Assembly: GCA_973895155.1 (NCBI GenBank)
Contig: OZ316897.1
Span: 1,452,515-1,516,514 of the forward strand
Origin: Marsupella aquatica
Taxonomy: Eukaryota > Plantae > Marchantiophyta
DNA length: 64,000 bases
Direction of reading: 5' to 3'
Shown here: in pieces, positions 23,201-46,713 of the stretch
How positions within the stretch are numbered: the first letter of the stretch is position 1
Layout: every line of letters begins with the position of its first letter
Made by a program: the position numbers and the translations under genes
Notes under the pieces: generated by a model
What the model was told of the DNA's origin: nothing
Databases searched by the model: none
What the model saw: only the letters and a program-made list of their open reading frames with translations

Positions 23201-23522
23201 TCACTATGGGAAGATTGAGGAGATCTTGATCATATCCTATGATGCCGATTCCAAATTTGAAGAGTATGTCTTCAAGTGTAAGTGGTTCAAAATTCACCTG
23301 GTTGGTGATAATCGCACGATACTTCTTGATGAGTGTGAGTTTACTCGACTGAAGACATCAGCAACTAGCTTTCAACCATCTCATTGGCAAACATCTGAAC
23401 CATTTATATTCCCACGTCACCTTGAGCAGTGTTTCTATATTTCGTACCCACCAGACCCAGAGTGGTCAATTGTTATACCGTTATGTGCCACGGTCCCATT
23501 CCATTATCTCGGAAAAACCTGA
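20297..23522 (+). pseudogene. CACTA Tnp2/TnpD transposase (Transposase_21, DUF4218, DUF4216 regions)
   Basis: IHACVNDCILY, RHVRLGLASDG, NYNLPPW, DPMHIEGNV, KTHDYHRL, PPSFFD, HLLVHLV, WMYWLER. Contains frameshifts and stops. Confidence 0.93.
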
Positions 23523-24040: not shown

Positions 24041-24210
24041 TGTTGGACCATGACAAGATGGAAAAAGATCTCGTGTATACTCCCAAGGAGAAGAATAAGT
24101 ACATGCGGCTTGAAGGCCGTTGCCCTGAGGCAGTTATCCTAACTGAGTTAGGTAGAACTCTAGTTAGGCAAGTAGAACTATGGTAAGTAGGTTTAACCTG
24201 GGTTACAACA
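24041..24210 (-). repeat. Copia 3' LTR
   Basis: Direct repeat of 29747-29916 with one visible mismatch. Confidence 0.95.
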
Positions 24211-24755
24211 CTCCCCCTTGGGTATGACATTTTCCAGGGAAACAGTTGTACCCATTCTAAACCTGCTTTGTTTCTACTGTATTCTTCTGCTTTCTCCTAT
24301 TTTATTTTCTCATCATGATATAGTTAGGGAATAGGATGTGACCTCCCTAAAACCTCCCCATCAATGGGAGGAAAGAGTATCACCATCCATGTTCCAAAAA
24401 CAGTTGTAGACTAATCAGAATCCTAAAAAGAATTATGTCCTGAATAAACAGGGGTACTAAGGGTGTGTATGCCGTAACATGTGTGTATAGAGACGGTATC
24501 GTGAGTAAAGTCGTGTCATTTTAGTGGTGAGTAGTCGTATGGAAACCGCATCGTAAGCCCTAAAGTTAGTCGTGGTGGGCCGCATTCGCTCGAGGCTCGT
24601 GGAGATGGTGGGCCATACTTCGGATGGTCGTGAGATGGTGGGTCGCACAGCGTTTGGTCGAGCCCGTGAGCGCGGCTTTTTCGGACGTTGCGTGCATGTT
24701 GCTACGTAGACTCTCCAGGTGATGTGCTCCCCCTGGAACGTGGGGTCGATGAATA

Positions 24756-26561
24756 TCAGGGCTGCAACAAAACTTTTAGGCTGCGCATTCCAATGGAGAA
24801 GGTTAATTTCTGATGCATAGCAGGTGGTAGGGCCTTGGTGAGTAGATCAGTTGAGTTCTCTGCACTCGAAATCCATCGCACATCGATTTGGTGTCCATTT
24901 TGTTCATGTGCAAAGAAAAATTTCGGTGCAATGTGCTTTGTTTTGTCGCCTTTGATGAAACCTGCTGCTATCTGTTCGACACAAGGCCGGTTGTCTTCAA
25001 AGATGACAGTAGGCGCAGTTAGTGTATTCGTTCCTGTGCATTCGGCAATATGGTTGATTACATTCCTTAACCAAATGCACTCACGACTCGCTTCATACAG
25101 TGCTATGATTTCAGAATGGTTGGATGACGTCGTCGTTAATGTCTGCTTTGTGCTCTTCCAAGAGATTGCAGTGTTTCCTGTGAGAAAGATGTATCCCGTT
25201 TGTGATTTTGCGTCTGCAGGGTCTGACAAATATCCTGCATCGGCAAACCCGGTTAGTGTGATGCGAGATTGTCGGGGGTAAAAGAGGCCCAGATCAGATG
25301 TACCGTGGAGGTATTTGAAGATCCGTTTGATTCCATTCCAATGCCGAATAGTCGGTTGTGAACTGTGCCTGGCGAGTAGATTGACTGCGAAGGCTATGTC
25401 TGGGCGGGTTTGGTTGGCAACAAACATGAGCGCCCCTATGGCTGACAGGTAAGGTTTCTCTGAACCAAGAAGTGGTTCTATTTCCTCTCTTTTGCGAAAG
25501 ATATCCTTTTCTTTGTCCAACGACCGTAGGTCCATTGGGGATCTTACTGCTTTGCTTGTCGACATGTGGAATTGTTGGAGCATTTTCTTGACGTACGTGG
25601 TCTGGTGGAGTAGTATTCCACTCGGGAGATGCTCAAACTGTAGGCCAAGGCAAAAAGTAGTTTGCCCCATGTCTCGCATTTCGAAAACACGTTTGAGTAT
25701 GTGTATCGTTTCTAGCATAATCTTAGCGGTTCCGAACAGATTAAGATCGTCAACATATATAGCGACGATTATGAGTTCACTGCCCTCGCGTTTGATAAAC
25801 ACGCAGGGAGCTATCTCGCTGTTCTTGAAACCCATAGCTAGCATTTCATCCTTGAATTTGTAGTACCAGGTCCGGCCACTTTGCTTGAGGCCATACAGAG
25901 AACGTAAAACTTGTACAACAAATTTTGTCTTAGCAGGAAGTGCGCCCGTGGCGGGGTGTGCAGATTGCTGAATGAATGCAATTGCTTTTGAAGTCTTCTG
26001 TAGTATGGCATGATCAGTATGCCTGAATGAGTAGTCGTTGTTCTGGCTGACGTTTTCTGTGTTATTCTCCCCCTGACTATGATAATGTACTCTAGATATC
26101 AATTCTGGTGGGGCTTCCATGTGTATCGTTTTATCTAACGTGCCGTAGAAATAAGCTGTGACTATATCCATTTGATGCATGGATAATTGATGGTGGAGTG
26201 CGAACGCAGTTAAATACCGGTACGTAATGACGTCCATGACTGGAGAATAGGTGAGGTCATAGTCTTTGCCGGGAATTTGTGTAAATCCCCTGGCCACTAA
26301 TCGGGCCTTGTATCTCACGATTGTCCCTTTGGAATCTCGTTTCTTTACGAACACCCACTTATATCCCGTAAGGTGTGTCTGTGGAGGGGCCCGAGTGATT
26401 GGTCCGAAGACCTGTCGGGAGATCAGTGAGTCTAGCTCAGATTTGATGGCTCTCTCCCAATGTTCCCAATCTTCTTGTTTCTGGGCTTCTACAATCGTTC
26501 TGGGATCGGGTAAGTCCGCTATGATGTTTTTTGAGATTTGGAAAGCGAATCTATCGTCCAT
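24756..26561 (-). CDS. Copia reverse transcriptase / RNase H
   Basis: YKARLVARGF, SLYGLKQSGR, YVDD, GFADA, IFEDN, TKHI. Separated from the integrase by an in-frame TAA. Confidence 0.95.
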   Translation of the reverse strand: MDDRFAFQISKNIIADLPDPRTIVEAQKQEDWEHWERAIKSELDSLISRQVFGPITRAPPQTHLTGYKWVFVKKRDSKGTIVRYKARLVARGFTQIPGKDYDLTYSPVMDVITYRYLTAFALHHQLSMHQMDIVTAYFYGTLDKTIHMEAPPELISRVHYHSQGENNTENVSQNNDYSFRHTDHAILQKTSKAIAFIQQSAHPATGALPAKTKFVVQVLRSLYGLKQSGRTWYYKFKDEMLAMGFKNSEIAPCVFIKREGSELIIVAIYVDDLNLFGTAKIMLETIHILKRVFEMRDMGQTTFCLGLQFEHLPSGILLHQTTYVKKMLQQFHMSTSKAVRSPMDLRSLDKEKDIFRKREEIEPLLGSEKPYLSAIGALMFVANQTRPDIAFAVNLLARHSSQPTIRHWNGIKRIFKYLHGTSDLGLFYPRQSRITLTGFADAGYLSDPADAKSQTGYIFLTGNTAISWKSTKQTLTTTSSNHSEIIALYEASRECIWLRNVINHIAECTGTNTLTAPTVIFEDNRPCVEQIAAGFIKGDKTKHIAPKFFFAHEQNGHQIDVRWISSAENSTDLLTKALPPAMHQKLTFSIGMRSLKVLLQP

Positions 26562-26624
26562 CTTTAAAGTAGATCGATCCCAGATGTGTTCGGTTTTATT
26601 ATAATGTATGGAGATTTCCTCTCC

Positions 26625-27997
26625 TTATTCTAATGATGGTGGCTGGAGTATGGCATTATTGACTGCAAGAATGGTGGGTTTTCTTTGGCGCGGGCGTTTG
26701 TCAGTGGAACCGAGTGGCCTGCCTCGTTTCTGCCTTGGGACTACCTCGGCTGATGGCTGTCCATCGGTCTCAATTCTCGAAGGGGTATTGGCGGCTGGTA
26801 CGTGCGATCGGGTGACCTGGGCTACATCCGCGAAGGAATCTGGGAGGTCTCCAAGTACCTTGGTAAGGTGGAGGATCCTTTGTACCTCGCGATCCGCTAG
26901 TGGGGTCCGAGGGTCATTCCAAAATTTGGAGTCAATCTGCCATTTTAATTGTTGGTTGTTCGTATTCTCGAGGTTTTGTGTGGTTCCCAGTTTAGGGAAT
27001 ACTGACTCATAGAAATGGCAATCTGCCATTCGTGCCTTATAAAGATCTGTCGTGGTCGGGTCGAGATATCGTATGATGGACGGTGAGTCCAAACCAACAT
27101 AAACGCCTTTCTGGCGTTGTGGACCAAGTTTGGTTCGTTTGGGACCCATGATCGGAACGAGGACTTCGCAGCCAAAGGTGCGAAAGTGTGATAAGTTGGG
27201 ATTGGATCCGAAGGCTAAACTATGAGGAGATGCATCGTTAAATGCGGAGGGGCGATATTGTAGTAGAGTTGCTGCGTGAAGGACTGCGTGTCCCCAGGCT
27301 GTTTGTGGAAGGTTGGTCTGCATGAGGAGTGGCCTCGCTACGGTTTGTATACGCTTAATCAATGATTCGGCCATCCCGTTTTGAAAGTGAACGTAGGGGA
27401 CTGGGTACTCTAAGTCAATTCCAGCAGTCATGCAAAAATCTTCGAATGTTTTTGATGTAAATTCACCAGCGTTATCTACTTGAAGAGTTCTAATGGGATG
27501 CTCCGGGAACTGTGTCTTAAGTTTAAGTATATGGGCAAGGAGTCTGGAGAATACTAAATTTTGGGTGGAAAGGAGTGAAATTTGAGACCATTTCGAGGAG
27601 GCATCTACTATGGCCAGAAAGAATCGGAAGGGGCCACTGGGGGGTCCACCGGTCCACATACGTCTGCATGAATTCTTTCTAGGAACTTGGGTATCCTTTT
27701 GTCAGTCTTCGTTGGGGATGGGCGAAGGACTAGCTTCCCTTGCGAGCAAGGTAAGCATGGTTCTTTCAATGAGGCTGGGTGCACTGAGGCGGGGATGCCT
27801 CGAGAATCTTTGAGGATCCTCTGGAACATTCGTAGGCCTGGGTGGCCGAGACGTCGATGCCATAGTTCTGTGGTGCTAATCAGTTGGGATATTACGTGGT
27901 AATTGTCTATTTTTGTTATATAAAAGCCTAATGGGAACGCCTTTAATGTTTCTTTGATCGTAGTTCCTGATGCAGTGGTCTCTAGTATATTCAACAC
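26625..27997 (-). pseudogene. Copia integrase (frameshifted)
   Basis: WHRRLGHP...C..C..GK zinc finger; VDNAGEF; QNGMAE. Frameshift near 27640. Confidence 0.92.
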
Positions 27998-28059
27998 CTC
28001 TTGGCCACTAATAGTGTTTGTCTGGATGTGGAATCCGTTCTCTCGGATATCCTTGAAAC

Positions 28060-29322
28060 TTAGTAAGTTTCTTGTGGCTCGGGGGCATAGATTGCAGAGC
28101 GTATGTGTATGGTTGTTTTCTGTGGTAAGATTACCATCGCAGGGCCATTTCCCTCTTCTAATTGATGGTTGCCTAGGATAGTCGTGACACTTCTATCGGA
28201 TGGATCAATGTATTTGAAATGTTTGCGCTCCCTGAGGATGGAGTGGGAAGTCCCACTGTCGACTATGCAACAAGTAGGATCATCTAATGGATTATGTGCA
28301 TCTGAAATAGGAGCTAAGTGTATTTCTGGTCTTATCTCAGTGGAATCAAGAAATGCCCCATGTGATTCTCGTGCGCCTTCGCCGATACTGGCTTTATAGA
28401 GCGCGACCAGATGTGCAGGTGCTCTACATTGTTTCTGGACATGACCTTTCGTTCCACATCTGTAATAGGTCATGGCTTCTTCTGGTTTCTGTGGGTGGCT
28501 GCGAGGATTTGATCTGACTTGCTGTGGCTGTTTCCAGGTATTGCTATTGTAGGTGTTTCGTGAACGGCCGCGGCCCCTGCCTGATGCGCGAAATTGGCCT
28601 CGACCGTCACTCCTAAAATCGCCCCATCGGCCTCTAGAGGTATTTCTACCCCGTCCGTTGCCACGCCCTCTGTAGGAACTTCTGGGGTCAGTGCGTGGAT
28701 TATTAAAATGGGTCTCCGTGTGGGGTTGGGGTGGTAAGGTACCCGGAGGCCTCTGCTTGGTGTTTTCCAGCAAAAGTATCTGGTGCTTTTCGGCAAGCAG
28801 CATATGGGCTATGAGCTCCGAGTATTTGGTAAAGTTCATGTTTCGGTATTGTGTTGAAATGACCATGTTCGTAGAATGGAGTGTAGAAAGAGTTTTTTCG
28901 ATCTGTTCCTGATCATTCACCGGTTTTTGACAGACTACGAGTTGGGAGGTAATGCAGAACAGCTCACTATTGTAAGCTGCGATGGTTTTGTGATCTTGCA
29001 CCCTCAGATTGATCCAATCGTGTAGGGCCGCCGGGAGGAAGATTGTTCGGGTATGGTCAAATCTAGAAAGGAGTGCTTCCCACAATCGGCGTGGGTTGAG
29101 CTCGTTTAGATATTGAAGCTTTAGTGGTTCAGTCAAATGTCGCCTGATTAAGATCAGCGCTTGAGCTTGCTCCTGTAAAGTAGATCCTGTGTCGAAGGTG
29201 ATCGTGTCTGCAATGTCTTTGGATGTCAAGTATGCCTCTATGTCCAATTGCCAAGAAAGATAGTTGGCGCCATCAATACTTAATGGCTGGAAATATAACT
29301 TTTCCATGGCTGCCGGAGGCAT
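28060..29322 (-). CDS. Copia gag plus aspartic protease
   Basis: NYLSW.LD.E, degenerate zinc knuckle (YRCGTKGHVQKQC), VDSGTSH protease motif. Confidence 0.92.
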   Translation of the reverse strand: MPPAAMEKLYFQPLSIDGANYLSWQLDIEAYLTSKDIADTITFDTGSTLQEQAQALILIRRHLTEPLKLQYLNELNPRRLWEALLSRFDHTRTIFLPAALHDWINLRVQDHKTIAAYNSELFCITSQLVVCQKPVNDQEQIEKTLSTLHSTNMVISTQYRNMNFTKYSELIAHMLLAEKHQILLLENTKQRPPGTLPPQPHTETHFNNPRTDPRSSYRGRGNGRGRNTSRGRWGDFRSDGRGQFRASGRGRGRSRNTYNSNTWKQPQQVRSNPRSHPQKPEEAMTYYRCGTKGHVQKQCRAPAHLVALYKASIGEGARESHGAFLDSTEIRPEIHLAPISDAHNPLDDPTCCIVDSGTSHSILRERKHFKYIDPSDRSVTTILGNHQLEEGNGPAMVILPQKTTIHIRSAIYAPEPQETY

Positions 29323-29746
29323 GATTACTATGATTATATGTAGTATGCGTTTCAGTGGCGGAAATACAATTTGTCTAGATTGATGAATTCACAAATTGAT
29401 GACATGAATAAATGGAATGTGAAGAGCTTTCGTAATTGGAGGTGTTAGCTGGAGTGGTCGATTGTAATTTGCGTTGGTTGCTGCACTCCAGCCTCTCGCT
29501 TTGTCTGATTGTCCGATCGCGTTGTGCACGGCTGCTTGCACGCTCGCCTTGCCTCTGTTCGTAGTCTTGAAAACTTCACGCGGCGAGTATATTGCGTGCG
29601 CGTTGGACGTTCATGAGACGCAACACTTCGTGCAAAACCTTCACGCGGTGACTAAAGATCGGACAAGTGTGAGCGTGGTTCGTAGAAGGGCGGAGGAAAA
29701 AAAAATTTAAAGGAAAAAAACCAGAGCACTACTCGTGCTGATAACG

Positions 29747-29916
29747 TGTTGGACCATGACAAGATGGAAAAAGATCTCGTGTATACTCCCAAGGAGAAGA
29801 ATAAGTACATGCGGCTTGAAGGCCGTTGCCCTGAGGCAGTTATCCTAACTGGGTTAGGTAGAACTCTAGTTAGGCAAGTAGAACTATGGTAAGTAGGTTT
29901 AACCTGGGTTACAACA
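29747..29916 (-). repeat. Copia 5' LTR
   Basis: Adjacent to the PBS; flanked by TSD AGTAC at 29917-29921. Confidence 0.95.
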
Positions 29917-32900
29917 AGTACATTATTATTGCTAAATTATGAAACAAAAGAGATCCAAATGCAATCGCAATGGTCGCGGATCCACAAATACTTTGCGAGA
30001 CAAATAGTATCTGAAAGAGTTGCAAATTCAATCCGATCTCAAACAAATTGCGAGGTATTTAGCTTCGCAACATTATGTTGCAAACCTTTGAGCATGGTTT
30101 ATTGTGATGCGTGTTTGATCACAAAATATCTGAAGTCGATGACATCGCAAGACCATCCCGGCGTAAAAAAAACTTTGCACAAGGGGCCAATATGTAGTAG
30201 TGGTTATTGTTGGGTCCGATTGTGCCCATCAGAGTTTCCTGAACCATTCTTTAGGTCTATGAGGGCTTTTCTCTAGGGTTTCGAGATCTAGAAACTCCTT
30301 CTCAGGAATCTAAGCAGCCGTATCTTTTCTTGATTTTGTGCTCGATCTTTGTGATTCCTTGTTTTCATGTTTGCTTCATTGAAATTGGAGCTCACTGTTC
30401 TCTTCATGGTCTACTACTGCACTATCTAAATTTTCTGTAGTCCATTTGTTATAAAGTTTGCACCTCAAGTGTCTGTGGAATCTCTCTGGTTTCAAGGGGA
30501 TTATGCTAACCGTGCCTTTCAACTTTCAATGGAAAAGTGAGCTGACCTATAGCCTACATCGTGCGCCTATAGTCATACACCCTACAAGCAAACTTTGTAA
30601 GTTTTTCTCGTACTATGAGAATACTGCTCTGTATCAATTGTATGATTGTGCGAAGAGCATTTTTGGAATGGAATGATCCACCAAATTAAAAGTGATTGGA
30701 TGGTTGAAAGTCTACCTTCCTGCGCTACATCTCTATGATGCACCACATAGGGTTCACTCAAACCTGTAGTTGTCATCCTGCTCTTTTTTATGATTATCCT
30801 CAAGTCCAATGGAAAAGGGAGGGCTATTGTTCTTCTCGGGCTATCCTATCGGGAATCCTAATTGGAAATCTATGATCCATGCAATTGATCAAAATCTACT
30901 ATTGACAGGTTTAAGACCAATTTCAGCCTCGACGCAATGAACCTCAATCTCCTTGTTGTACGCTTTATATATCTAATATATCCTTTTGTGGTTTTAACTT
31001 TACGACTAGCTTCCATTCGCTCCCGTTGAATTATTTGCTCCCGTTGAATTCCAGTAGATCCTTAGTGGAAATTTGTCTAACGTGTGGACAATCAAATCTC
31101 TGTGTTTCCTCACACCTCCAGTGTTTGAACTTCCTATCCGTTTGATCGGTGTTGCTGCTCGGGGTGCTGCTCCCTCAATGGATGAGAGTGCTAATATTTC
31201 TGACTATGCAGTGCTATCTGGACTGCATTTGAGCTATCTCCAACAGTCCTCAAATTATTTTTGACTCGGAGTCCAGCCCTGAATATAAGTTGAACTTGCA
31301 CATCAGTGTCACTTATTCGAGATTACGTACCTAGTGCGTTAGTTAGTGTCAAAAGTCAGTGTCTTCAAATTAAATGGCTTGGAAACTTAAGAACCTGGCA
31401 AGGTATTCCCAATACAGTATCTAATGACGTAGACTCATATTTCAAAAAGTTGTTGTTGATTGTTTCCGAAGCAACTTCATTCATAAGTGAATGAAATTAA
31501 ACATTGCTTGAAACGGTGCTGGAATACTTTGTCATTGGAGTGACATAATTGAACTTCATTTAACACCAGTTGACCAGCTCGGCTATACTTGTTGCACAAC
31601 ACTTACCTAGGTGCACAGTTTCCGCCATCAGCTATTAATTTTGAATTGATAGCAGCCGTGGATAGTCCTTGTGAGAGGTTGTTAGCTTTCCAATGAACCA
31701 TGTGCGACAGACTTAGCAGAATTGCAGAAAGAGTACATATATTACCCGCAATGGAAGAGGATTTGCCGCTCATTACAGTTAGTTTGGGATCGATCAAGGA
31801 AATGACAAATGGTCACGGAGGGTTCAATCAGTAGTGCTTACTTACGCATACATAAGGCCTTTCCAATTACTTGCAGCAGGCAAGGGTTTACTGCTTGTGA
31901 AAGGGTTCATGTAATTGTTTGTGCTACTTACTTAAGTTCTCTTCAGAGCACCGTCTTCACGCCCAATTGGGATCAGAGCACTCTCTGGTCAATCATTTGT
32001 GTTTGTTGCCCAGGTAAACAGCTAGTGACTGTAGCTACTGAATATCTTTATACAGTAGAGTTAGAATTTTTTCTCGCTCAATAGAGTGGCCGGCTCCATA
32101 GAAATTGTCAACCAGGATATATTGCAGCAGTGGGAACATCAGAGAACATTAGACAGCGGCATGCCGTCTGGGAAAACATCTCTTCTCCTTTAGTGAGCAC
32201 CTATCCTATACAGTCAAGTGCATTCCGGCGACCGTCCACTTTAGCAACCTGCTCAACTTCCTGTTGGAAGCCATTGCTGGGAAGGAGAACAAAATCATGT
32301 CATACGGTCCAAAAAGAGTATTGCTTGGGACCTTCAAATTGGCAAACACGCTATAAATCCTGATCGCTTTTCTGTCATCAAACTGTTTGTTTGGGGAGCA
32401 GGTTAATGAATATGCACTAGAGGTTTGCATATATGCGGTTTGAATATCGCACCTACACTAGAGAAAGACAACAGAATATGGTTGAGCTAAGATTTGGCAT
32501 ACACCTTTGTGACAGGTAGCTGCACTAGGGGATGACAACAAAACGTGGTTGAAGCTAAGGCTTGACATACACCTATATTATAGGTATTTGCATGTGTATC
32601 AGTCAAGGGATGCTATATCTTGCAGTTTGAGTTTCCTGTGGTCAACAATACATTGACTAGGGCTTTGAAGAAGGGCTCTCTGCTAAGGAAGAGAGAGGAA
32701 GTGTCCATGGCAGTGTACTCACAACCATTGCAATAGGCATTAATTTTCTATGCCTTTTATATCCCGTTCAATCCATCCTTGGTTGTGTGGTCTATGGAAA
32801 ATAACCTAACCTTTTTTGGGTATCATGTTTCTAAGTTTTTTGTGTTATCCACTTGCAGATTGTGGACAACCTTGAAAGTTGGAACTTTATGAGAGTAAAT

Positions 32901-33010
32901 AGACCTTTTGCTACGAGGCACATTTACTCTTCTCCTTCATACAAACAGCGCCAAGAAAGTAAGTATATCATGAGCCCCCGTTGGCAAAGAAAGTCTTGTC
33001 CTTGAAATAA

Positions 33011-33350
33011 CAAAATACATGTTTGAAAAAATTCTAAGACTTAGTTACAAATCAAGGCATTGTGGTACACACATCCGAAAGGGTCGGTGTACTGTTTGAC
33101 CTTAGTTGTAAATTTACAAACCTAAAAAAAATATGTTTGAAAAAACTATGAAAAGTTACAAATTAAGGCATTTCGGTACACACATCCAAAAGGGTCGGTG
33201 TACTGTTTGACCCGAGTTGTAACTTTACAAACCTAAAAATATATGTTTGAATTTTTTTTAAAAGTTACAAATTAAAGCATTCTTGTACACACACATTTGT
33301 AAGAGTTGGCGTCTTGTTTGACCCAAGTTGTAACTTTATGAACTTAATAA
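33011..33350 (+). repeat. Three tandem ~110-116-bp units in a probable intron
   Basis: Unit contains ATGTTTG...GTTACAAAT...GTACACACAT...TGTTTGACC..AGTTGTAA. Lies between GTAAGT (~32960) and TTGTAG (33367). Confidence 0.85.
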
Positions 33351-33367
33351 TTTTTGTTTTCTTGTAG

Positions 33368-34765
33368 ATGGTCAAACAAAAAACAACTCACCTGATTGAA
33401 AATAAATGTGAAGCATGGGGAGATGATTTTTCTGTTAATTTATTTGTTCAAATTTGGGTATACTTGAGCAAATTGCACCTTGGAAAAGAAAGGTTTGCAC
33501 TGTCTTGGATTCTAAGAGACGAAAAAGTTCTTGTACTTTTTGTTACAAAAGTACTCAATATCACGCTCAATAGATCCTCAAAGTTTTCCAAAGCTATATT
33601 TTGGAATGGGTTTAAAAATTGCAAGGAAAGACAAAATGAAGTTCCTGTGTTCTGTCCGGATACACGGAAAGAAATTGATGAAATGTTTTCCAATCATCAA
33701 TGTAGGTTGAACTTACCAAAACCCATACGTCAGTTCATTGGAATATTTTCTCACTATACTCAAAGAAAACTTCAAACTATGAGAAAAGTTCAAGAAACCT
33801 CTTGTGCTACAAGTAGTTTTTTTTCTAAAGTAGAAGTAACTGTCCACCGTATCTCTTCCTCTCGTGTTGCACATTACAAAGGGTGCATCCTTGGAACATG
33901 GAATGGTAAGAAGACTAGTTCTTCCTCTGCTAATGTTCGGTTTATATTTAGGGACTTCCCTAATGATTTTGTGGTTATGGACAAAACCCATAACTGTACA
34001 TATTTTTACGATAGGTCAGGATCCAAGCCTTATCTTATAGCAGTGGTTGTAGGCCATCAAAAACTATAATGTGAAACTATGAGTTTGATTTGAAGTTTAT
34101 TAGTTTCCTTATTTGATTCACATTACGAGATTAAAAGGGGAAAAAACAAGGCATCATTCGAGAGTTACATGACAGGATTTGGTCCTTTTGATAATCCATA
34201 CAAGTCCAAAAGAGTATCTTTTTATACTCACAAAACAAAAATCAGACATCTCTTAACAGACTGTGCACAATCCATGACTTCCGCTTTTGAGGATTTAGTT
34301 GATAAGTACTCTCATCTTGAGCTTGTCAACATCATTTTGGCTCTTTATATGTGGTGGTGCCCTAGAGTGTTGGAAAGTTATTTCAAATACTCCCACCCAT
34401 ATCTTGCTCCTGAAGACCACGATATGTCATTTTTTGAGAAAGAATTGGAAAGTAAAGGGCCAAGCCCTTATCAACTATACATCAGCAAAGATTTCTACAC
34501 CAAAATGCACGAAGATGAAGACATGGCAGAGTTTACATTATGTTATGCTAGTCATCTAGATTCAACAATTTTGCCAATTGATTTTGTGATTCCTGAATAT
34601 GGAATGTGTCTGGGAATTGAAGATGGCAACCTCTTTGCTTTCCGTAGTGATGTTGTACATGGCACAACATACATGAGCTCAACTAGTAATGCCGCTTATG
34701 TAGGTGCTCTTACGATAAATAAAAAATTGGATAGATTGTTACAAAGGAATCATAGAAATACTTAA
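33368..34765 (+). pseudogene. TET/JBP-like Fe(II) dioxygenase with two premature stops
   Basis: ORFs 33368-34069 and 34169-34765 are in one frame, broken by TAA (34067) and TGA (34091). C-terminal motifs KMHEDED...FVIPEYG..L....GNLFAFRSDVVHGT give an HxD...H metal triad. Confidence 0.7.
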
Positions 34766-35856
34766 ATTTGTTAGATTGTACATCCACTTATAAAACTTTC
34801 AAAAATGATTTCTTTGTAGTCTCTAGTAGTGATCATAAAAACTTAACATTGCTAGACCTTTACAAATGATTAAAAACATTTTTTCAGTCTATTTTGCACT
34901 ACATTTTTGACAACTTCTATTCTCAACTATTTGATAAACATCCCAAAGCTCTTCCAAAAGTTCCATACGAGCCTCTTCTTCCTCGAATGTTGGCTTGAAA
35001 AACATTTTCAGCAACCGATCATATTTCCATCGATACATGGATTTTCCTTCACAACCTCCGCTGACTAGCCCACTACGATGAATTCTTGGATTGTCTATGC
35101 ATTCAGTTTGAGTACTAGTATTCATGCTGTAAACAGTCATAACACTACTGTCACATGAACTGCAACCAGACTCTTCACCTGAAACACATTTAAATTAACA
35201 ATCCTATCAAATTCACAGTATTACTCAAAATGCAGTAATCTAGATTGTCTCACAAAGATATACTTGTCATAGTGACTATTCACTCAGGCCCGGGGTCCTC
35301 ACTTCTTTTCTTCCGACCCATCATGCGCGAATAAGTATAGGGTTTTTTTATTGGCTTTAGTGAAATACTTTTAAATTTTTGTTTAAGAAGATTAGGGTTA
35401 TTTTAATCCAATTTTGAGAATTATAAGAATCATAGGGTTTTTTATTATCAAATATGGGAATATTCTTGGAATATTCCATTAATTTAGGGGTAAAAAAAGT
35501 CATAAAAAAAACTTTATTGACTTAACTTTTAGGGTGTTTATTCCCCCAAAACTTTGAGCGTGATATGGGACACCCCTTGGATTGAGGCCCCCGAGCACTC
35601 AGGCAATTACTTTTTCTGTCACCGAATCAGTCATGTACTTAAAAGGTAGTACAATATAGCATGGTGAAATGTTTTGTGTGTGCTGATCTTTACAAATTAA
35701 AGTAGCAAATAGTCTCACGCTTATGATAGCATCCACATAACACTACATGTAGTTAAAACGTATGTGTTCTATGTACATTTACGTTTTCTTGGAGATACTT
35801 CTATCTTAATACTTCCAGGAAAGCTAGAAGTAGCACCATCATCAAACAAAGAATGC

Positions 35857-36616
35857 TTAGGAATATATATCTCGTAATCCACCTGCATCTCGTTTGTTGT
35901 TCATTTGAGCAATGACTTTCCCTGCCTGGTTTGCTGTCAAATTGACCAAAATGTCCACAGGTACTTTGAATGAATGACGTAGCTGTCTCAACTGATCTAT
36001 TGCTTCTCCTCTTGTATGACATTTCAGTAATTTCATGCGCTCTTTCCTTGTCAGTGTTTCATTATCAAATGAAACATGTTTGTAACGTAGACATTCTTTT
36101 ACAATGCCTGCACACAAGTCCAGATGTACATAAGAATCACACAATATATAATCTAGTATAAAAAGAATTTGCCGTGTATATATAGCTAAACAATTTAGAA
36201 AGTAAGATTCATACCAGATGTCGGATACTCTCCATGCATATCCAAAAACATTTGTTGTCATTCCTTTTTAGCATCAATGAGAAGACTCATGCCCTTCACA
36301 CTTATACCACCTTCCCACTCTGTCATCTCTATCCCCAATGAATCTGCATAGCTAATTTGTTTTGGTGTAGGCTCCTTCATTGGTTCCTCCCCTTTATCTT
36401 CTGTGTCTTCATCCTTGATATCAACAAGGATCATTCGTAAAAACTCTTTGGCTGTCGGGGTTCCGTGTTCTGTTGCCGTTGCTCTTACTTTCACTTCAGG
36501 CGACAATTCAGATCCCAAGTTGACTGGAGATTGTTGTGTACCATTTCCGTAATTGGAAAAAACATTCTCAGTTGCTTTCAAGTTCTCTATGTTGTGCAAG
36601 TTCCTCTTCGGTGCCA
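35857..36616 (-). pseudogene. Hypothetical protein, two ORFs probably joined across a frameshift
   Basis: MAPKRN... ORF ends in an A-run where the next ORF begins. No recognisable domain. Confidence 0.35.
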
Positions 36617-36658
36617 TTTCAAAAGATCTGCACATGTCATTCCCCAACTTACTACATC

Positions 36659-36900
36659 TCATTCTCTGTAGACAGTAAAATCCACAGGAGATAACTTACC
36701 CACAAATTTTAAATTCTTCCTGTTTGTAACACGACTTAACATCACATATGTTAGACCAGGAGCAAACGCTTCAGTTAGCACAACCAGAACTTTTCCAGTT
36801 AAAGTACATCCTTGTGATTTATGTCCCGTAATCAAATATCCTAACATTAGTGGAAATGTTGACTTCTGGTAACTAATCATGTTCTTGATTCTTTTGTATT
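36659..36900 (-). pseudogene. PIF1-family (SF1B) helicase C-terminal fragment, Helitron-type
   Basis: FPLMLGYLITGHKSQG (motif V) and GLTYVMLSRV (motif VI). Confidence 0.85.
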
Positions 36901-38528
36901 TAGTACATGTGACGGGGTTCCCGTCACTAAAAATTCTCGATAATTGTTTAGCTGGGTTGTGCCATGTAAATAACCATTGTAAATACCGTTTTTAAAACTT
37001 TTTGAAGTTACTTCCGTCATTATAAGTTGGTAATGCCCCGGCGGGCTTAACTTATTCTTTTTTCTCTCTCGCAATAGTTCTGAGGTTTACGACGACCTAA
37101 GCAAGCACCTGTAGGATTTACCGTTTAACTTGGGCTATTTTTGAGACCCCAATAGCAAGGTTTAAGGAGACAAACTTTAAGTTTTATGGTTTAAGGGGGG
37201 TTTAAACAAATAAAGGGGGAAACCCCTTGTAAACAATGGGGGCTAAGAAGGGGTAGAATTGAGTGGGGCCAGGTGGAGCCCGGGAAGGCAAGCCCCCTCA
37301 CTAAAGGGCTGCTGGGCCATAAGGGGCACCCCTAGGGCTTGACATGTGGAATCTTGGGGGCTAAGGAGGGAGCTCTGCAAGTAATAAGGATGAGAAGGGC
37401 GAGTGCCAGGGCGTGAGCCGGGCCGACGCACGGAGAGAGCCGGGAGGCGCAGCAGACAGAGCGCAGGAAGTCGGGGGGAGGCTAATTTTACCCTCCCAGG
37501 AGGGGGCCAAACGGCAGCCGAGGCAAGCAAGCAGCCGGGAGGTGCAACAGATGGGGCGAAGACTGCCGGGGCAAAAAGGAAACGCACCCTGCATAGGGTG
37601 GCGTGAAGGAAGGGGGGAAAATTAAATTCCCCCAGCCTCGGAGGTGATAGGGCGCAGTGCGAGCCCTGCATAGGGCCGTGTGCTGCCAGGTGGACGCTCC
37701 CGCGAGTTGTGTGAGAGGGGGACGTGGGGCCGCAAGTTGGGGCACGCATTAGCTGTGTGGAGGGGGATTAAACCCCCCGATTAAAGGAAGGATGGGGCAC
37801 ACAATTAGGTCCTCCCAGGAGGAGGCCGCAAGGCAGCAGCCGGGGCACCTGCCGGCAGCTGAGTGAGGAAACCGGGAGGGCTTATGGAGGCGAGAGAGAG
37901 AGAGAGAGGTACGAGGGGGAGTAAATGCTCCCCGACTAGTGGGAGGCAGGTACGGGGTACAGCGAGGGCGCGAGGTGGCAGCTGTGGACCGGGGCGCGAG
38001 TGAGGTACAGACAGGAGGCATCAGGCCGAGGCGCAACTGAATAAAGGGGGACAAGTGGCGCTCGATGGGAAGCCGCAAGCTAAGAAGGGCCGGCCTTAAG
38101 TTAGTAAGGAAGGGGTTCTCCCCCTTCGTTTATTCTTTGGTTTTTTTCTTCTTCTCGTCTTTCTCCGCCGCGCGCGACTCATTCCATTGCTGAAAGCAAA
38201 CTTTGAGTTCTCACATCCCATGGCCGAAAGCTCTTGAGTGTCTCCCCAACCTTCTCAAGTGCCCCCTTGGTGCTTGGCTTGGAGAGCTAGGAAGTTGAAT
38301 TGAGACCTCGTGACGGTAGCACACCGACAACATCATTGAGTGACTTCTGGGAAATTGAGAGTGGTTCTTGATCGTGATACGGGGGCCGTTCGGGCCAGGA
38401 TTTAAATTCAGTGACGGGATTTTGTGATTGAGCTTTTTTCTGGAGCATGGATGCTTGATCAGCCTAAGTTCAATGCGGCTTGCATTCGTAGATACAAGGC
38501 CGCTTACCGTGAGTACATTGGGATACTA

Positions 38529-39465
38529 ATTTTATTTTATTTTAATTTCATTTATTCCGCGTGAACCCCACGGATGGGGGAAGCAAGCAGGCCAAAAGGC
38601 AGAAGTTCCTCAAAGAGGGCAAAAAGAGCATGAAAGAAAGACCAATTATGAGTTTGTGTACCAAGGACACAAGGACCAAATAAGGCAACCGAGCAGTCTA
38701 AATCTATCCGAACGAGGTGCTAGAGAAAGGCTTTGTTTCTACACCGAGCTAAGCCATACAACAACGATGCATGCTCTGTCATAAAGATTCTATCTGTCTG
38801 GCACCAGACCTCAAAATCCTATCGCGTTCTCCTTCCAAGAGAGAAGTAGCACCAAGTAATCGGGTGTGTTTATGGTTGGAGCCAACTGAAGCAGCAACTC
38901 CAGACAAATGATCTAAAGTCTCACAGATAGCTGAGATAGGATTGAAGACACGCTTCCGAGCAAGATCAAAGGTCTGGCCGTTTCTTGCTAGCCAGATAGA
39001 CCAAAGAATCTCATATATCAGAAATGCCCGTAACGAACACAGAGGTGATCTCCTTTGGAAGGACAGAATCAAGCCGACAATAGTCACAGTCTGGACAATA
39101 AGCTGTCCATTCAACCATCCTCTTACCTCCTCCCAGCACCTGGTCGCATGCCTGCATTGAAAGAAGAGATGTGGAATGGTCTCCACCACCCCACATCTCA
39201 GAACACACAGTCCATCAGACTTTGCAATCCGCAGGGCTCTAGAACCAGAGAAAAGGCCCTGTGCAATTATTCTCCAAATGAAAGTCTTCGCCCTAGAAGA
39301 TAAATCCGAAGTCCATAGTGCTTGCCAGACTTCACTCCATTCAGGAACAGATAGGGATATGCTCCAGATCCTGTTGAGTCTAAGGTAATCAGATCCCTTA
39401 GTGCGCAATAATTCATATATTCTGTGATTAGGTAATGCAAATGATTTAAGCTGAGAATCTACATC
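38529..39465 (-). mobile_element. 5'-truncated L1-type LINE (zf-RVT region, 3' UTR, A-rich tail)
   Basis: ORF 38779-39408: W..LW...K.FIWR...C..C...ETIPHLFFQC...CW. T-rich tract at ~38530-38556 on the + strand. No TSD identified. Confidence 0.85.
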
Positions 39466-44144: not shown

Positions 44145-46713
44145 ATGTCGCACACGATCCTCTCCAGCTCGGCCATTCGATTCTGGACGCAGTTCCTATC
44201 TACCGGAAGGCACTTGGCCGATTCATTGAAACACGCCAACCCGCGACGATACGAAATCGAACGCAAGTACGAGAGAGCCATCCGCTTGGCAGGATGACAC
44301 CACTACATCCTTAACTTTGACTACCCGGCTCAGAGCGAGCTTTACCGACCAGCAGAGGTATCTGGGTACTTCTTCAACGGAGACAAATATATCGGTTTCT
44401 GGGAAGCATTGCTTCGGCTTCCGGACGAGGTCTTCAATATCCCGGGTACAATCGACCTGCAGCGACATCACTTCGACCACATCCCTGCCCAGGTTCGGGC
44501 TGTCATTAACAGCGAGTCCAGTACCAACCGTTCGACAAGGGCGTCCGCACTCGCTTCGGAGAACTTCTACCAGCACCTGTAGAGCTTCATGGGAACTCGG
44601 CCATCAACCAACATGACTAACTCAGTCGTGCCCGTACCCGTACCCGTGCCCATGCAACCCCAGCCTCAACCTCAGGCTCAGCTTCAGCTTCAGCCTCAGC
44701 CGCAGCCTAGCCAATACCCACCACCTATCGCCCAGCCAGCACAGGTACGCTCCATCATCAACGCTGTGGATCTTAGCGATGACGACGAGGCTACCCTACC
44801 CTTGACCAGGCGGCCCAGAGGAACAAGCGCTCGGGGGGCCGACACTATATCATCCCCACCCCCTGCTCTGACCCCAGGAGCGGCCCCGGCAGACAACATG
44901 GTGACCGTGGCCGCCCCGGGCCCGTTACCAATGGCAGTGGCACTACCCAGGCCCGATCGGGAGGATGGGGAAGTGTCATCTTCCCCGAGCCAGTCACGGG
45001 GAAAGAAGAGGAAGGAATCTGCCACTGCATCCAGGTTACCGTTGGCCACGGTAGCCGTAGCCAAGGTGACGATGCACCGCATGGGGGAAAACGTTCACAA
45101 CAACATCCTCCATCCTAAGCATGCAGTGTACCTGAAGACTCAGGGATTTGAGCATCTCACCTCTCTCCCCTGGAACACTTGCAGGTACTACGGGGAGGAC
45201 ATGACAGAATTCGTCAAGAATTATGACGACGTACGTCAACAGACTCGGCTGCGGGGAAGGAATATGTCCCTCATAGAAGAACGGCTCAAGATGATCTTCG
45301 GGTTACCCGAAGGTGACCATCGAGTCGAATCACGGGCTCATGCCCGAGATAGCTGAGCGGCTGGAGTTCCAAAGGTACGCTCTCCACATGATGGAACCCC
45401 GGGGGGAGATCTCCGCCGCCCAGGTTATCCAGGTCGAGAACTATCGACCTAGGAAATGGGCGTCGTACTTCGCTAAGAAATTCCATGAAGAGATGGAGCG
45501 ACGAAGGAAGACGCTGTACATTGGCGGGAAGGCGTATTTTGCTAGCCACATCGAAATCATTCTTGAGTGGTACGCCCAGTTTGATCGACGAACCCTTCCC
45601 CGCATCAACGTCACAAAGTTGGTCCCAGCTAGGTGGGTTTTTCCGGCATTGGAGAGACGGCCCCAACCCGAGGCCCGAAGTCCAGCGGGCACGCCAGCTT
45701 CACCCACCCCACCTCCACAGATAGCTGTAATCGTAACCGAGGAGGCGCCGGATGAGTCGGTTGTCGCAACCGTTGATGCGACCCAACTAGTCGGGCTAAG
45801 TATAGAAGTTGGTATGGCAGAGGTCTTACCCGAGCCCGGGTCTCCCAAGGACCCACCGGTGGCAATTCCGGAGAACCGGACATTGCTGCAGGAGGACACT
45901 CCAGCCCCTTCCAACGTTATGTCCCCAGGGCTGGACGTCACTGCCCCAGCCCCCGTGCGTGTTGACGTCTGCCCGTGCCCAAATCCGGACAGGCACAACT
46001 TGGACCACCCGGAACTCTTTGTACAGGGTACGTTTCTGAACGGGCTTCTGGGAGGTTTCTCTCATCAAATTGCCCCAGATACCGGGGAGTTCATGGCCCG
46101 AAAGGTAGCCTGTTTCTTCAATCAGGAGTTGGTTGCCGCAGTAAAGGCAGGTCGGGCCCAGTCGGAGGCCCTTCAGAGGATAGAACGGTACCGGGTGGAG
46201 TCCGTGTACCTAAAGAATGAAGTGGTGGCTCAAGAGGCTGAGCTTCTACAACTACGACCCAAGGTTGCAGCCGCCGATGAGTTGTTAGCAAAGGCGCACG
46301 CTCTTACCGCCCTAGCCGAACAGGCCAAAGCTGGGAATGAGGCCAAGATTACACGACTCCGGAACCAGATTGACAGTTTGAAGAATCAAGCTGTCACCTG
46401 GCAGAAAGACCTAGAGGAGGCCGAGGAACGAGCCCAGCGGGACACGGCGGAGATAGCCACGCTGCAGGCCGAGATGGCGCGGCTCCAAACCGAGGCCGAG
46501 AAGCAGGACCAGATGGCGGGTAAACTGACGAGCGACGCCCAGCAGCTGGAGGAGGCATGTCAGGAGGCAGCAGAGGAGACGGACGAGGCGAGGCGAGAGA
46601 ACGAATCTCTGCTGGACTAGGTCCAGCTCCTCAAAGCGGACAATGATAGGCTTTGAAGGCAGCGGGATGGCCGTTCCCATTCGGGCGGCTCTGGCAAGCG
46701 TGCCAGACATTAG
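44145..46713 (+). pseudogene. ~850-aa accessory ORF (ATHILA-ORF1/plant-transposon-protein-like domain plus C-terminal coiled coil)
   Basis: Single frame from ATG 44145 through stops at 44295 and 44580 into 44589-45356. One frameshift leads to 45313-46620, ending GKRARH*. Motif GFEHLTSLPW...EFVKN...LRGR...IFGLP. Confidence 0.75.

What the first reader, a model, noticed from the sequence alone, without database searches (positions are those of the whole stretch)
33368..34765. TET/JBP-like dioxygenase in a land-plant TE nest, lacking the usual 2-oxoglutarate-binding Arg
Seen: one 465-codon frame broken only by two C-to-T-type stops. It has HxD (His codon 34508), F.IPEYG, G.LF.F and a distal HGT (34658), and the last strand (AYVGALTINKK) has no Arg. 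Established: TET/JBP genes travel on KDZ-type DNA transposons in fungi and algae; flowering plants lack canonical TETs; algal CMD1 keeps the iron triad and uses ascorbate to glycerylate 5mC. Inference: a mobile 5mC-modifying gene family, possibly CMD1-like, acting against silencing. A PIF1 helicase remnant lies ~2 kb away.
Basis: partly seen in the sequence, partly recalled or inferred. Interest (0 to 1): 0.85.

Follow-up and report, generated by a model that had tools for sequence, protein, structure and literature searches.

The report
Decayed mobile TET-like DNA dioxygenase gene
This is a broken copy of a gene for a TET-type enzyme (the kind that chemically alters methylated cytosine in DNA), lying tail-to-tail with a helicase gene remnant in a pile of plant-type transposons; it belongs to an unannotated enzyme family, which is notable because land plants are generally said to have no TET enzymes.

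Summary
Window 33368-34765 (+) is one 465-codon frame with two in-frame stops, against about 33 expected by chance. The HxD and distal His motifs sit at the stated codons.

No Pfam or PDB sequence match reaches threshold. A profile search found about 57 real relatives, mostly fragments from short metagenome or read-assembly contigs, including intact ORFs of 447-449 aa. AlphaFold models of an intact relative (pLDDT 89.5) and of the window's C-terminal piece (92.5) match TET2, CcTet, CMD1 and NgTET1 best. It is therefore a TET/JBP-fold dioxygenase, dead in this copy.

- **The missing Arg.** The last strand lacks the canonical 2-oxoglutarate Arg in the whole core clade. All intact full-length relatives carry an Arg 4-6 residues after the distal His. 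The window has Met there, so part of the "missing Arg" is decay. An ascorbate-using, CMD1-like chemistry is unproven.
- **The transposon link.** No KDZ transposase is present. The gene is convergent with a PIF1-like helicase gene, and that pair recurs in an independent contig (partner 52% identical). This suggests a Helitron-like two-gene module. Its ends could not be found.
- **Setting.** It is nested among CACTA, copia and LINE elements.

It is a new variant of a known kind, of moderately high interest.

The parts
33368..34765 (+). Pseudogene of a TET/JBP-fold Fe(II) dioxygenase: 465 codons, with in-frame stops at 34067-34069 (TAA) and 34091-34093 (TGA). The two pieces, 33368-34066 and 34094-34762, were analysed apart.
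   Evidence: frame. (homologues at 37-58% identity). (fold).
34136..34138 (+). Arg codon of the conserved 'h-P-x-h-x-R-G' motif (R239 in P0002 numbering, 26 of 28 members). It is probably the equivalent of TET2 R1261, CcTet R205 and CMD1 R244.
   Evidence: conservation. It lies 124 residues before the HxD His, against 121 in TET2 and CcTet (residue numbers). The equivalence is inferred from spacing only.
34508..34522 (+). Iron-binding H-x-D (His 34508-34510, Asp 34514-34516), plus a second, nearly invariant Asp (34520-34522).
   Evidence: H in 35/37, D in 35/38 and the second D in 33/36 members. The profile alignment to CMD1 places the second Asp on CMD1 D350, the residue that contacts N4 of 5mC.
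34658..34675 (+). Distal iron-binding His (34658-34660, H-G-T). A Met codon (34673-34675) sits at His+5, where 16 of 28 relatives, including five of the seven distinct intact full-length ORFs, have Arg (the other two have it at +4 and +6).
34691..34723 (+). Last beta-strand (AAYVGALTIN). It has no Arg or Lys at the canonical 2-oxoglutarate C5-carboxylate position. It carries a conserved Tyr and a terminal Asn.
   Evidence: Canonical positions were taken from PMC7854593 and PMC11040006.
33012..33359 (+). A 111-bp tandem repeat (3.1 copies) directly upstream of the ATG. Each unit holds a core of about 75 nt that is also found upstream of a related gene in another contig (L007).
35857..37074 (-). 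Remnant of a convergent PIF1-like helicase gene. It comprises the helicase C-terminal motifs (36659-36880) and a conserved C-terminal extension (35860-36261). The frames are broken, and the N-terminal helicase part is missing beyond about 37100.
   Evidence: PIF1 hits in the PDB. (frames). (the extension is 52% identical, E 3e-28, to the gene convergent with P0002 in L002).
32800..37150 (.). AT-rich block (31-41% GC) that holds both genes. It is bounded on the right by a jump to 60-64% GC. This is the likely extent of the surviving fragment of the carrier element. No termini were identified.
   Evidence: composition. (no terminal repeats, no second copy in the window).

Best explanation
The frame is a decayed copy of a gene of about 450 codons. 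The ORF itself has no intron. It encodes a TET/JBP-fold, iron-dependent nucleic-acid dioxygenase of a family that no current profile library covers.

Shown here:
- The fold and the iron triad.
- A conserved second Asp that aligns with the residue contacting the amino group of 5-methylcytosine in CMD1.
- Inactivation of this copy by two stops.
- A conserved convergent pairing with a PIF1-like helicase gene.

Inferred:
- The two genes were a module of a mobile element, most likely Helitron-like. TET-carrying Helitrons are known in fungi. The module landed in a nest of CACTA, copia and LINE elements and was truncated on the helicase side.
- When intact, the enzyme flips out 5mC in the element's own (and other) DNA and oxidises its methyl group, which counteracts methylation-based silencing.
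- The clade has lost the canonical Arg on the last strand. It most likely still uses 2-oxoglutarate, binding the distal carboxylate with a relocated Arg 4-6 residues after the distal His (present in every intact full-length member) and perhaps a conserved Tyr.
- The window copy has Met at the relocated-Arg position and is non-functional.
For: Frame and motifs.

Family:
- 58 profile hits at E<=1e-3, one of them spurious. They include intact ORFs P0002 (447 aa) and P0003 (449 aa). Identity to the window is 37-58%.
- Sub-threshold Pfam hits of family members go almost only to Tet-like families: PF20515 in 5 members and PF12851 in 2.

Fold:
- The P0002 model has pLDDT 89.5 and pTM 0.90.
- The top 25 Foldseek PDB hits are all TET2, CcTet, CMD1 or NgTET1, at E 1e-8 to 1.6e-5. 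The next class, IPNS and others, starts at 1.5e-4.
- The top viral hits are annotated JBP1/TET oxygenases.
- The window's own C-terminal piece gives a model with pLDDT 92.5, and its top 10 hits are CcTet and CMD1.
- A profile of the divergent members hits CMD1 in the PDB by sequence at E 0.0029, aligned across HxD...H.

Conservation: R239, H363, D365, D367, H414, G415, T416, Y427 and N434 (P0002 numbering). The window keeps 69 of 77 conserved columns.

Relocated Arg: present at His+4 to +6 in all intact full-length ORFs (P0001, P0002, P0003, P0012/60/62, P0026, P0042). It is absent only in the window and in short fragments.

Gene pair: L002 carries a convergent gene 175 bp after P0002. Its product is 52% identical (E 3e-28) to the window's minus-strand ORF at 35860-36261, which runs on from the PIF1 motifs.

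Other decayed copies exist elsewhere: L007 has stops and a frameshift.

Precedent: fungal Helitron and EnSpm elements carry TET/JBP genes (PMC12730594).
Against: - No element termini, target-site duplication or Rep/HUH domain could be found. The carrier type is therefore unproven.
- The gene pair is seen in only one other contig. The other contigs are too short to tell.
- The most distant named relative, in the chytrid Geranomyces, sits among ordinary host genes.
- That Arg is present in only 16 of 28 members that cover the position.
- The canonical R-x5-aromatic-x-[H/R] motif of the last strand, shared by TET2, NgTET1, CMD1 and CcTet, is not recognisable. Base recognition may therefore differ.
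- The substrate (5mC, T, RNA) is untested.
- I could not identify the host species. 'Land plant' rests on the types of transposon domains present.
Confidence: 0.6

Rival explanations
1. CMD1-like chemistry. The clade gave up 2-oxoglutarate. With the last-strand Arg gone and an aromatic residue in the pocket, it uses ascorbate or another cosubstrate and adds a group to 5mC.
For: - There is no Arg or Lys on the last strand anywhere in the core clade.
- In the profile alignment to CMD1, the family's conserved Tyr (Y375 in P0002; Y in the window's TLCY) falls on CMD1 W358. That is the residue said to occupy the place of TET2 R1896 and to clash with 2-oxoglutarate.
- Canonical TETs have Leu or Val at that position.
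- CMD1 is the only PDB sequence hit of the divergent-member profile.
Against: - CMD1 itself retains the Arg in sequence (R410). Loss of the Arg is therefore not its signature.
- All intact full-length members keep an Arg at His+4 to +6, which could serve 2-oxoglutarate.
- A Tyr, unlike a Trp, commonly hydrogen-bonds the C5-carboxylate in 2-oxoglutarate oxygenases (general knowledge).
- Foldseek ranks TET2, CcTet and CMD1 equally.
- No assay has been done.
Confidence: 0.15
2. The dioxygenase gene is a passenger of the CACTA element whose transposase lies on the same strand at 20300-23522. A young copia (24041-29916) inserted between them, and the helicase remnant is an unrelated neighbour.
For: - The transposase is on the same strand and about 4 kb upstream once the copia is removed.
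- Fungal EnSpm/CACTA elements are known to carry TET/JBP genes.
- A SET-like ORF sits at the 5' side of the same transposase. This would fit an element that collects chromatin genes.
Against: - No CACTA-type terminal inverted repeat pair encloses both.
- There is a composition break at about 32.8 kb between the two.
- The conserved neighbour in an independent contig is the helicase-linked gene, not a transposase.
- The second CACTA transposase in the window (59637-62165) has no dioxygenase gene. It is, however, only 32-54% identical to the first, so this says little.
Confidence: 0.15
3. It is a former host gene, not mobile, which died and was buried by transposon insertions.
For: - A distant relative in Geranomyces variabilis lies among housekeeping genes.
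- Only one copy is present in the 64-kb window.
Against: - Relatives occur as several diverged paralogues per sample, including two in ERZ22866046 and several in the SRR18067xxx runs. Some of these are decayed.
- The gene is conserved in a pair with a PIF1-like helicase gene.
- It sits in an AT-rich block that differs from its surroundings.
- The family is absent from annotated plant proteomes in the protein collection. Only one member, a chytrid protein, carries a species name.
Confidence: 0.08

Closest known systems
CcTet of Coprinopsis cinerea (fungal TET/JBP enzymes, many of them transposon-associated)
   Same: - It is the best or near-best structural match (7vpn E 2.4e-8, TMt 0.51; top hits for the window's own piece).
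- The H-x-D...H spacing is 50 residues, against 50-52 here.
- An upstream Arg lies about 121-124 residues before the HxD.
   Different: - CcTet has the last-strand motif R385-x5-F391-x-R393, and R385 is essential. The family here has Ala or Val at that place and no such motif.
- No significant sequence similarity was found.
- An extra N-terminal helical domain of about 130 residues is present here.
CMD1 of Chlamydomonas reinhardtii (ascorbate-dependent 5mC glyceryl-transferase)
   Same: - It is the only solved structure reached by sequence (E 0.0029), and it is among the top structural hits.
- The second Asp aligns with D350.
- An aromatic residue sits at the W358 position.
- It has the H-G-T distal motif.
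- It comes from the green lineage.
   Different: - CMD1 keeps Arg410, Phe416 and Arg418 on the last strand; this family does not.
- The aromatic residue is Tyr here, not Trp.
- CMD1 is a host gene and is not known to be paired with a helicase.
- Ascorbate use here is untested.
Human TET2 and Naegleria NgTET1 (canonical 2-oxoglutarate-dependent 5mC oxidases)
   Same: - The fold (4nm6 E 1.9e-8; 4lt5 E 1.6e-5, TMt 0.55).
- The iron triad.
- An Asp or Asn just after the HxD for the cytosine amino group.
- An upstream Arg.
   Different: - There is no equivalent of R1896 / R289, Y1902 / F295 or H1904 / H297 on the last strand.
- There is no Cys-rich domain.
- The Pfam Tet_JBP model is matched only below threshold, and only by two relatives.
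TET-carrying Helitron and EnSpm transposons of fungi (Kojima 2025, PMC12730594)
   Same: - A TET/JBP gene is linked to a PIF1-type helicase gene inside repetitive DNA.
- The proposed role is escape from methylation silencing.
   Different: - Those elements are reported only from three fungal lineages; here the setting is a plant-type transposon nest.
- The Rep domain and the termini were not found here.
- The protein family is different, with no Pfam-level match.

Membership tests
TET/JBP superfamily (fold and ancestry) | Double-stranded beta-helix fold whose nearest structural relatives are TET/JBP nucleic-acid dioxygenases | tested here: met
   the top 25 PDB hits are all TET2, CcTet, CMD1 or NgTET1; the same holds for the window's own C-terminal piece; the top viral hits are annotated JBP1/TET oxygenases.
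TET/JBP superfamily (fold and ancestry) | H-x-D ... H iron-binding triad with about 50-residue spacing | tested here: met
   spacing is 50 in the window and 49-54 in relatives. NgTET1 and CcTet have 50 and CMD1 has 52.
TET/JBP superfamily (fold and ancestry) | Match to Pfam Tet_JBP (PF12851) or the Tet-like PF20515 at the curated threshold | tested here: not met
   The window pieces, P0001 and P0002 give no hit. Among 61 members, 5 reach PF20515 (best E 0.0014, 19 bits against a cut-off of 27) and 2 reach PF12851 (best E 2.9e-4). All are below the cut-off.
TET/JBP superfamily (fold and ancestry) | Asp or Asn shortly after the HxD that contacts N4 of the flipped cytosine | tested here: met
   The second Asp (33/36 Asp, 3/36 Asn) is aligned by HMMER with CMD1 D350. 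This is by alignment only; no structure with DNA is available.
Canonical 2-oxoglutarate-dependent TET 5mC oxidase | Arg at the start of the last beta-strand binding the 2-oxoglutarate C5-carboxylate (TET2 R1896, NgTET1 R289, CcTet R385), within R-x5-[FY]-x-[HR] | tested here: not met
   No Arg or Lys is conserved at His+9 to +20 in the core clade or in the window. Only the two most divergent members (P0042, P0055) have an Arg there. Caveat: an Arg at His+4 to +6 in all intact full-length members may substitute for it. The geometry was not testable.
Canonical 2-oxoglutarate-dependent TET 5mC oxidase | Upstream Arg (TET2 R1261, CMD1 R244, CcTet R205) over the base and cosubstrate | tested here: inconclusive
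   R239 is conserved in 26/28 members and is present in the window (34136-34138). It lies 124 residues before the HxD, against 121 in TET2 and CcTet. The equivalence rests on spacing only.
Canonical 2-oxoglutarate-dependent TET 5mC oxidase | Oxidation of 5mC to 5hmC, 5fC and 5caC with 2-oxoglutarate | not testable with these tools
   A biochemical assay is needed.
   The aligned position holds a conserved Tyr (25/35), not a Trp, and there is no Arg on the last strand at all.
CMD1-type ascorbate-dependent 5mC modifier | Ascorbate as cosubstrate and 5gmC as product | not testable with these tools
   An assay and LC-MS are needed.
Helitron (carrier element) | PIF1-family helicase gene linked to the cargo | tested here: met
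   (PDB PIF1 hits at E 1.6e-6). The linkage is conserved in L002.
Helitron (carrier element) | Rep/HUH nuclease domain upstream of the helicase | tested here: inconclusive
   None was found among the ORFs scanned. The helicase gene is cut off at about 37100 by GC-rich foreign sequence, so absence says little.
Helitron (carrier element) | 5'-TC ... hairpin-CTRR-3' termini with insertion at AT | tested here: inconclusive
   The left flank 32300-33100 was read. No convincing terminus can be called from a single degenerate copy.
KDZ or CACTA DNA transposon (carrier element) | KDZ transposase next to the TET gene | tested here: not met
   No KDZ domain was found among the ORFs scanned. The transposases present are Transposase_21 + DUF4218 + DUF4216 (CACTA), at 20300-23522 (+) and 59637-62165 (-).
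KDZ or CACTA DNA transposon (carrier element) | Terminal inverted repeats (CACTA...TAGTG) enclosing the transposase and the dioxygenase gene | tested here: not met
   No inverted repeat of 40 nt or more was found in 14000-40000. No CACT[AG] 20-mer pair with fewer than 5 mismatches was found.

The most novel reading that the evidence does not exclude
A streptophyte or land-plant lineage carries, on a helicase-encoding mobile element, a TET/JBP clade that has rebuilt its cosubstrate pocket: the canonical Arg is lost and a Tyr sits where CMD1 has Trp. Its intact members would modify 5mC with a cosubstrate other than 2-oxoglutarate, or give an unusual product. That would provide an enzymatic source for the oxidised or otherwise modified methylcytosines measured in plants that are said to lack TET enzymes.
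Probability: 0.12. Interest if true: 0.9.

Novelty: new variant of a known kind. Interest (0 to 1): 0.62.

Why it matters
[quoted passage not shown] Yet 5hmC, 5fC and 5caC are repeatedly measured in plant DNA. A TET-fold gene family sitting in plant-type transposon DNA, with intact relatives available for expression, makes that contradiction directly testable.
- **Range of TET-carrying transposons.** It would also extend the phenomenon of transposons that carry their own demethylation enzyme beyond fungi.
- **Active-site variant.** The family offers a natural variant of the TET active site without the Arg that is essential in CcTet.
- **Limits.** This copy is dead, the host species was not identified, and no activity is shown.

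Tried and rejected
- **Direct Pfam and PDB sequence searches.** Searches with the two window pieces, P0001, P0002, P0026, P0042 and the profiles A1 and A2 gave nothing relevant. Only the profile of divergent members (A5) reached CMD1.
- **Word-indexed protein searches (all three used).** They found only P0001, P0002 and a few fragments.
- **The search for related loci.** The run with A2 failed because no stretch was conserved enough. The run with A3 on the metagenome contigs found no relatives, so no long contexts were obtained.
- **Contigs of relatives.** Most are 1-4 kb, too short to show a carrier element.
- **Element boundaries.** No terminal repeats were found, no second copy or shared flank exists in the window, and there are no CACTA ends.
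- **Comparison of the two CACTA transposases.** They are only 32-54% identical with no shared DNA, so the comparison is uninformative for the passenger hypothesis.
- **Rfam scan of the window.** No hit.
- **Literature searches.** A search for the sample accessions found nothing. One badly posed literature search was wasted.
- **SET-like ORF.** Pfam is borderline and there is no PDB support.
- **P0037.** This Pacearchaeota repeat protein was discarded as a spurious hit.
- **Intron reading of the stops, rejected.** Homologues align through the two stops in frame.
- **Chance ORF, rejected**.
- **Residue-level geometry.** This could not be examined because model coordinates are not exposed.
Full report
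**1. The observation**

Window 33368-34765 (+) translates as one frame of 465 codons. It has two internal stops, TAA at 34067-34069 and TGA at 34091-34093. From the composition of the stretch, 33.5 stops are expected. The other five frames hold 20-46, and the lowest count in 2000 shuffles was 16.

- H-E-D with the His at 34508.
- FVIPEYG and GNLFAF.
- H-G-T at 34658.
- A last strand, AYVGALTINKK, without Arg.

An intact homologue aligns across both stops in the same frame. They are therefore breaks, not an intron. The tools take no read-through, so I analysed the pieces 33368-34066 and 34094-34762 apart.

**2. What the protein is**

Neither piece matches any Pfam family or any PDB chain by sequence. 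The word-indexed protein search found two relatives from one ENA metagenome assembly:
- P0001: 319 aa, 43% identical.
- P0002: 447 aa, an intact single ORF.

A profile of these was run exhaustively against 1.84 billion cluster representatives. It gave 58 hits at E<=1e-3, of which 13 were at E<=1e-30.
- Most hits are ORF fragments on contigs of 1-4 kb from Logan read assemblies, JGI metagenomes and ENA.
- P0003 (449 aa), the P0012 group (427-439 aa), P0026 (457 aa) and P0042 (416 aa) are full-length.
- Only one real relative carries a species name, a hypothetical protein of the chytrid Geranomyces variabilis.
- One hit, P0037, is a repeat protein and was discarded.
- The closest relatives of the window copy are 43-58% identical.

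Each of the 61 members was scanned alone against Pfam. The only recurrent families are PF20515 ('Tet-like 2OG-Fe(II) oxygenase', 5 members, best E 0.0014) and PF12851 (Tet_JBP, 2 members, best E 2.9e-4). All are below the curated thresholds.

**3. The fold**

AlphaFold2 on P0002 with the 61-sequence alignment gave pLDDT 89.5 and pTM 0.90. The model has an N-terminal helical domain of about 130 residues followed by a beta-rich core.

Foldseek against the PDB:

| Target | Entry | E-value | TM-score (target) |
|---|---|---|---|
| TET2 | 7ne6, 4nm6 | 1e-8 to 1.9e-8 | 0.41-0.44 |
| CcTet | 7vpn | 2.4e-8 | 0.51 |
| CMD1 | 7cy7 | 2.8e-8 | 0.22 |
| NgTET1 | 4lt5 | 1.6e-5 | 0.55 |

These four enzymes fill ranks 1-25. 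Other 2-oxoglutarate oxygenases (IPNS, DAO1, NMAD-1, ALKBH1) start at 1.5e-4.

Against viral models, the top hits with a name are 'JBP1/TET oxygenase domain' proteins of phages and a giant virus.

The window's own C-terminal piece folds with pLDDT 92.5, and its ten best PDB hits are CcTet and CMD1.

A profile of the eleven most divergent members reaches CMD1 in the PDB by sequence (E 0.0029). The alignment runs from before the HxD to just after the distal His.

The protein is a TET/JBP-fold dioxygenase.

**4. The active site and the Arg question**

Reference residues, taken from the papers:

| Enzyme | Fe ligands | Upstream Arg | Last-strand motif | N4 contact |
|---|---|---|---|---|
| TET2 | H1382, D1384, H1881 | R1261 | R1896, Y1902, H1904 | N1387 |
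| NgTET1 | H229, D231, H279 | R224 | R289, F295, H297 | D234 |
| CMD1 | H345, D347, H397 | R244 | R410, F416, R418 | D350 |
| CcTet | H326, D328, H376 | R205 | R385, F391, R393 | not noted |

In the family studied here (P0002 numbering):
- H363 occurs in 35/37 members, D365 in 35/38 and H414 in 32/35. An upstream R239 occurs in 26/28.
- R239 lies 124 residues before the HxD, against 121 in TET2 and CcTet.
- A second Asp, D367, occurs in 33/36 members. HMMER aligns it with CMD1 D350, the residue that contacts N4 of 5mC.
- The window copy keeps all of these. It matches the consensus in 69 of 77 conserved columns.

The last strand reads A-x-Y-h-G-x-h-x-h-N across the clade. It has no Arg or Lys, and the R-x5-aromatic-x-[H/R] motif is not recognisable. 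Only the two most divergent members (P0042, P0055) have an Arg just before that strand.

Two further facts change the reading.
- **An Arg close to the distal His.** An Arg sits 5 residues after the distal His (H-G-T-x-[YF]-R) in 16 of 28 members. An Arg at +4 to +6 is present in every intact full-length ORF. It is absent only from the window, which has Met at 34673-34675, and from short fragments that may themselves be decayed.
- **CMD1 keeps its Arg.** CMD1 does not lack the Arg in sequence. In the profile alignment, the family's conserved Tyr (Y375; the window's TLCY) falls on W358. CcTet and TET2 have Leu and Val there.

Whether the +5 Arg or the Tyr lines the cosubstrate pocket cannot be decided without model coordinates. 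I judge a relocated 2-oxoglutarate site more likely (about 0.5) than a CMD1-like change of cosubstrate (about 0.15). Both are inference.

**5. The neighbourhood**

The gene lies in an AT-rich block, about 32800-37150 at 31-41% GC. The block ends on the right in a jump to 60-64% GC.

Downstream, on the opposite strand:
- ORFs 36877-37074, 36659-36880, 36258-36662 and 35857-36261 lie head to tail in three different frames.
- The piece at 36659-36880 matches PIF1-family helicases at E 1.6e-6 to 4e-5, and Helraiser weakly.
- The N-terminal helicase part is missing.

In contig L002, the intact P0002 gene is followed after 175 bp by a convergent gene. Its product is 52% identical (E 3e-28) to the window's 35860-36261 ORF. 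That is at least as conserved as the dioxygenases themselves (37-42%). The dioxygenase and the helicase-linked gene therefore form a conserved tail-to-tail pair. The helicase is not an incidental neighbour.

Fungal Helitrons, and also EnSpm, KDZ and other elements, are known to carry TET/JBP genes (PMC12730594). A Helitron-like carrier is therefore the most economical reading. No Rep domain, termini or target-site duplication could be identified.

The wider setting:
- A CACTA transposase (Transposase_21, DUF4218, DUF4216) at 20300-23522 (+).
- A young copia at 24041-29916, with 170-nt LTR segments 99% identical.
- A LINE remnant with zf-RVT at 38779-39408 (-).
- A second, unrelated CACTA transposase at 59637-62165 (-).

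No KDZ transposase is present. These domain families are typical of land-plant transposons. I could not identify the species.

**6. Other copies**

The window holds one copy. Relatives occur as several diverged paralogues per sample. At least one of them, L007, is itself broken by stops and a frameshift. This fits a repeated, decaying, element-borne gene better than a host gene. The distant chytrid relative, in contrast, sits among housekeeping genes.

**7. Comparison with the literature**

[quoted passage not shown] My literature searches found no report of a TET/JBP gene in a land-plant genome or transposon. The library is incomplete, so this is absence of evidence only.

**8. Verdict**

- **Observation:** confirmed.
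- **Interpretation:** partly supported. The TET/JBP fold is confirmed. The KDZ link is not supported. CMD1-like chemistry is unproven, and part of the argument for it is an effect of decay.
- **The thing itself:** a dead copy.
- **Novelty:** it reveals an unannotated TET/JBP clade with an altered last strand and a conserved helicase partner, in plant-type repetitive DNA. It is a new variant of a known kind.

Noticed in passing
window 33012-33359 (cores 33043-33118, 33154-33229, 33263-33340); L007:509-584: The 111-bp tandem repeat just upstream of the ATG contains a core of about 75 nt. The core is 78-79% identical in DNA to a stretch about 85 nt upstream of the ATG of the closest N-terminal relative (P0006 in L007). 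The coding regions of the two are only 57% (nt) and 45% (aa) identical. The core includes a short palindrome and a 6-bp hairpin stem. It was not found in the other five small loci. It may be a promoter or another cis element of the module.
   Followed up: partly
window 32959-33367; L007 about 446-666: In both loci, splice-acceptor-like sequence directly precedes the ATG (polypyrimidine followed by TAG or CAG). A GTAAGT or GTGAGT donor lies 220-410 nt upstream. The ORF may therefore be preceded by a 5' UTR intron that contains the conserved element. No transcript evidence is available.
   Followed up: no
window 19664-20146 (+): A 160-aa ORF immediately upstream of the CACTA transposase ORFs matches the Pfam SET domain at the edge of the threshold (E 2.2e-4, 22.1 bits against 22.4). 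It has no PDB sequence support. It may be a captured histone-methyltransferase fragment, as reported for some oomycete transposons.
   Followed up: partly
window 24041-24210 and 29747-29916: These are direct repeats of 170 nt at 99% identity. They flank copia gag, integrase and RT ORFs on the minus strand (24756-29322). This is a young LTR retrotransposon, inserted between the CACTA transposase and the region that holds the dioxygenase gene.
   Followed up: partly
window 59637-62165 (-): This is a second CACTA transposase (Transposase_21 E 4.5e-65, DUF4218 E 3e-27). It is only 32-54% identical in protein to the one at 20300-23522 and shares no DNA similarity with it. It therefore belongs to a different family.
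   Followed up: partly
window 37200-38200: A block of 60-64% GC with strong purine skew abuts the truncated end of the helicase remnant. Its ORFs are low-complexity. What it is remains unknown; it may be the insertion that cut the helicase gene.
   Followed up: no
window 15447-16203 and 18979-19186: Tandem arrays upstream of the CACTA transposase: 143-bp units (3 copies) with 51-nt G/T-rich sub-repeats, and a 26-bp unit (about 8 copies). They may be subterminal repeats of the CACTA element.
   Followed up: no
window 32-2260 (+) and 45313-46620 (+): Long ORFs of 742 and 435 aa with only weak coiled-coil-type Pfam hits. Their function is unknown.
   Followed up: no
L007:667-1681: The relative in this Logan contig is itself a pseudogene. 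Stops follow residue 213, and the frame shifts twice before the catalytic half.
   Followed up: partly
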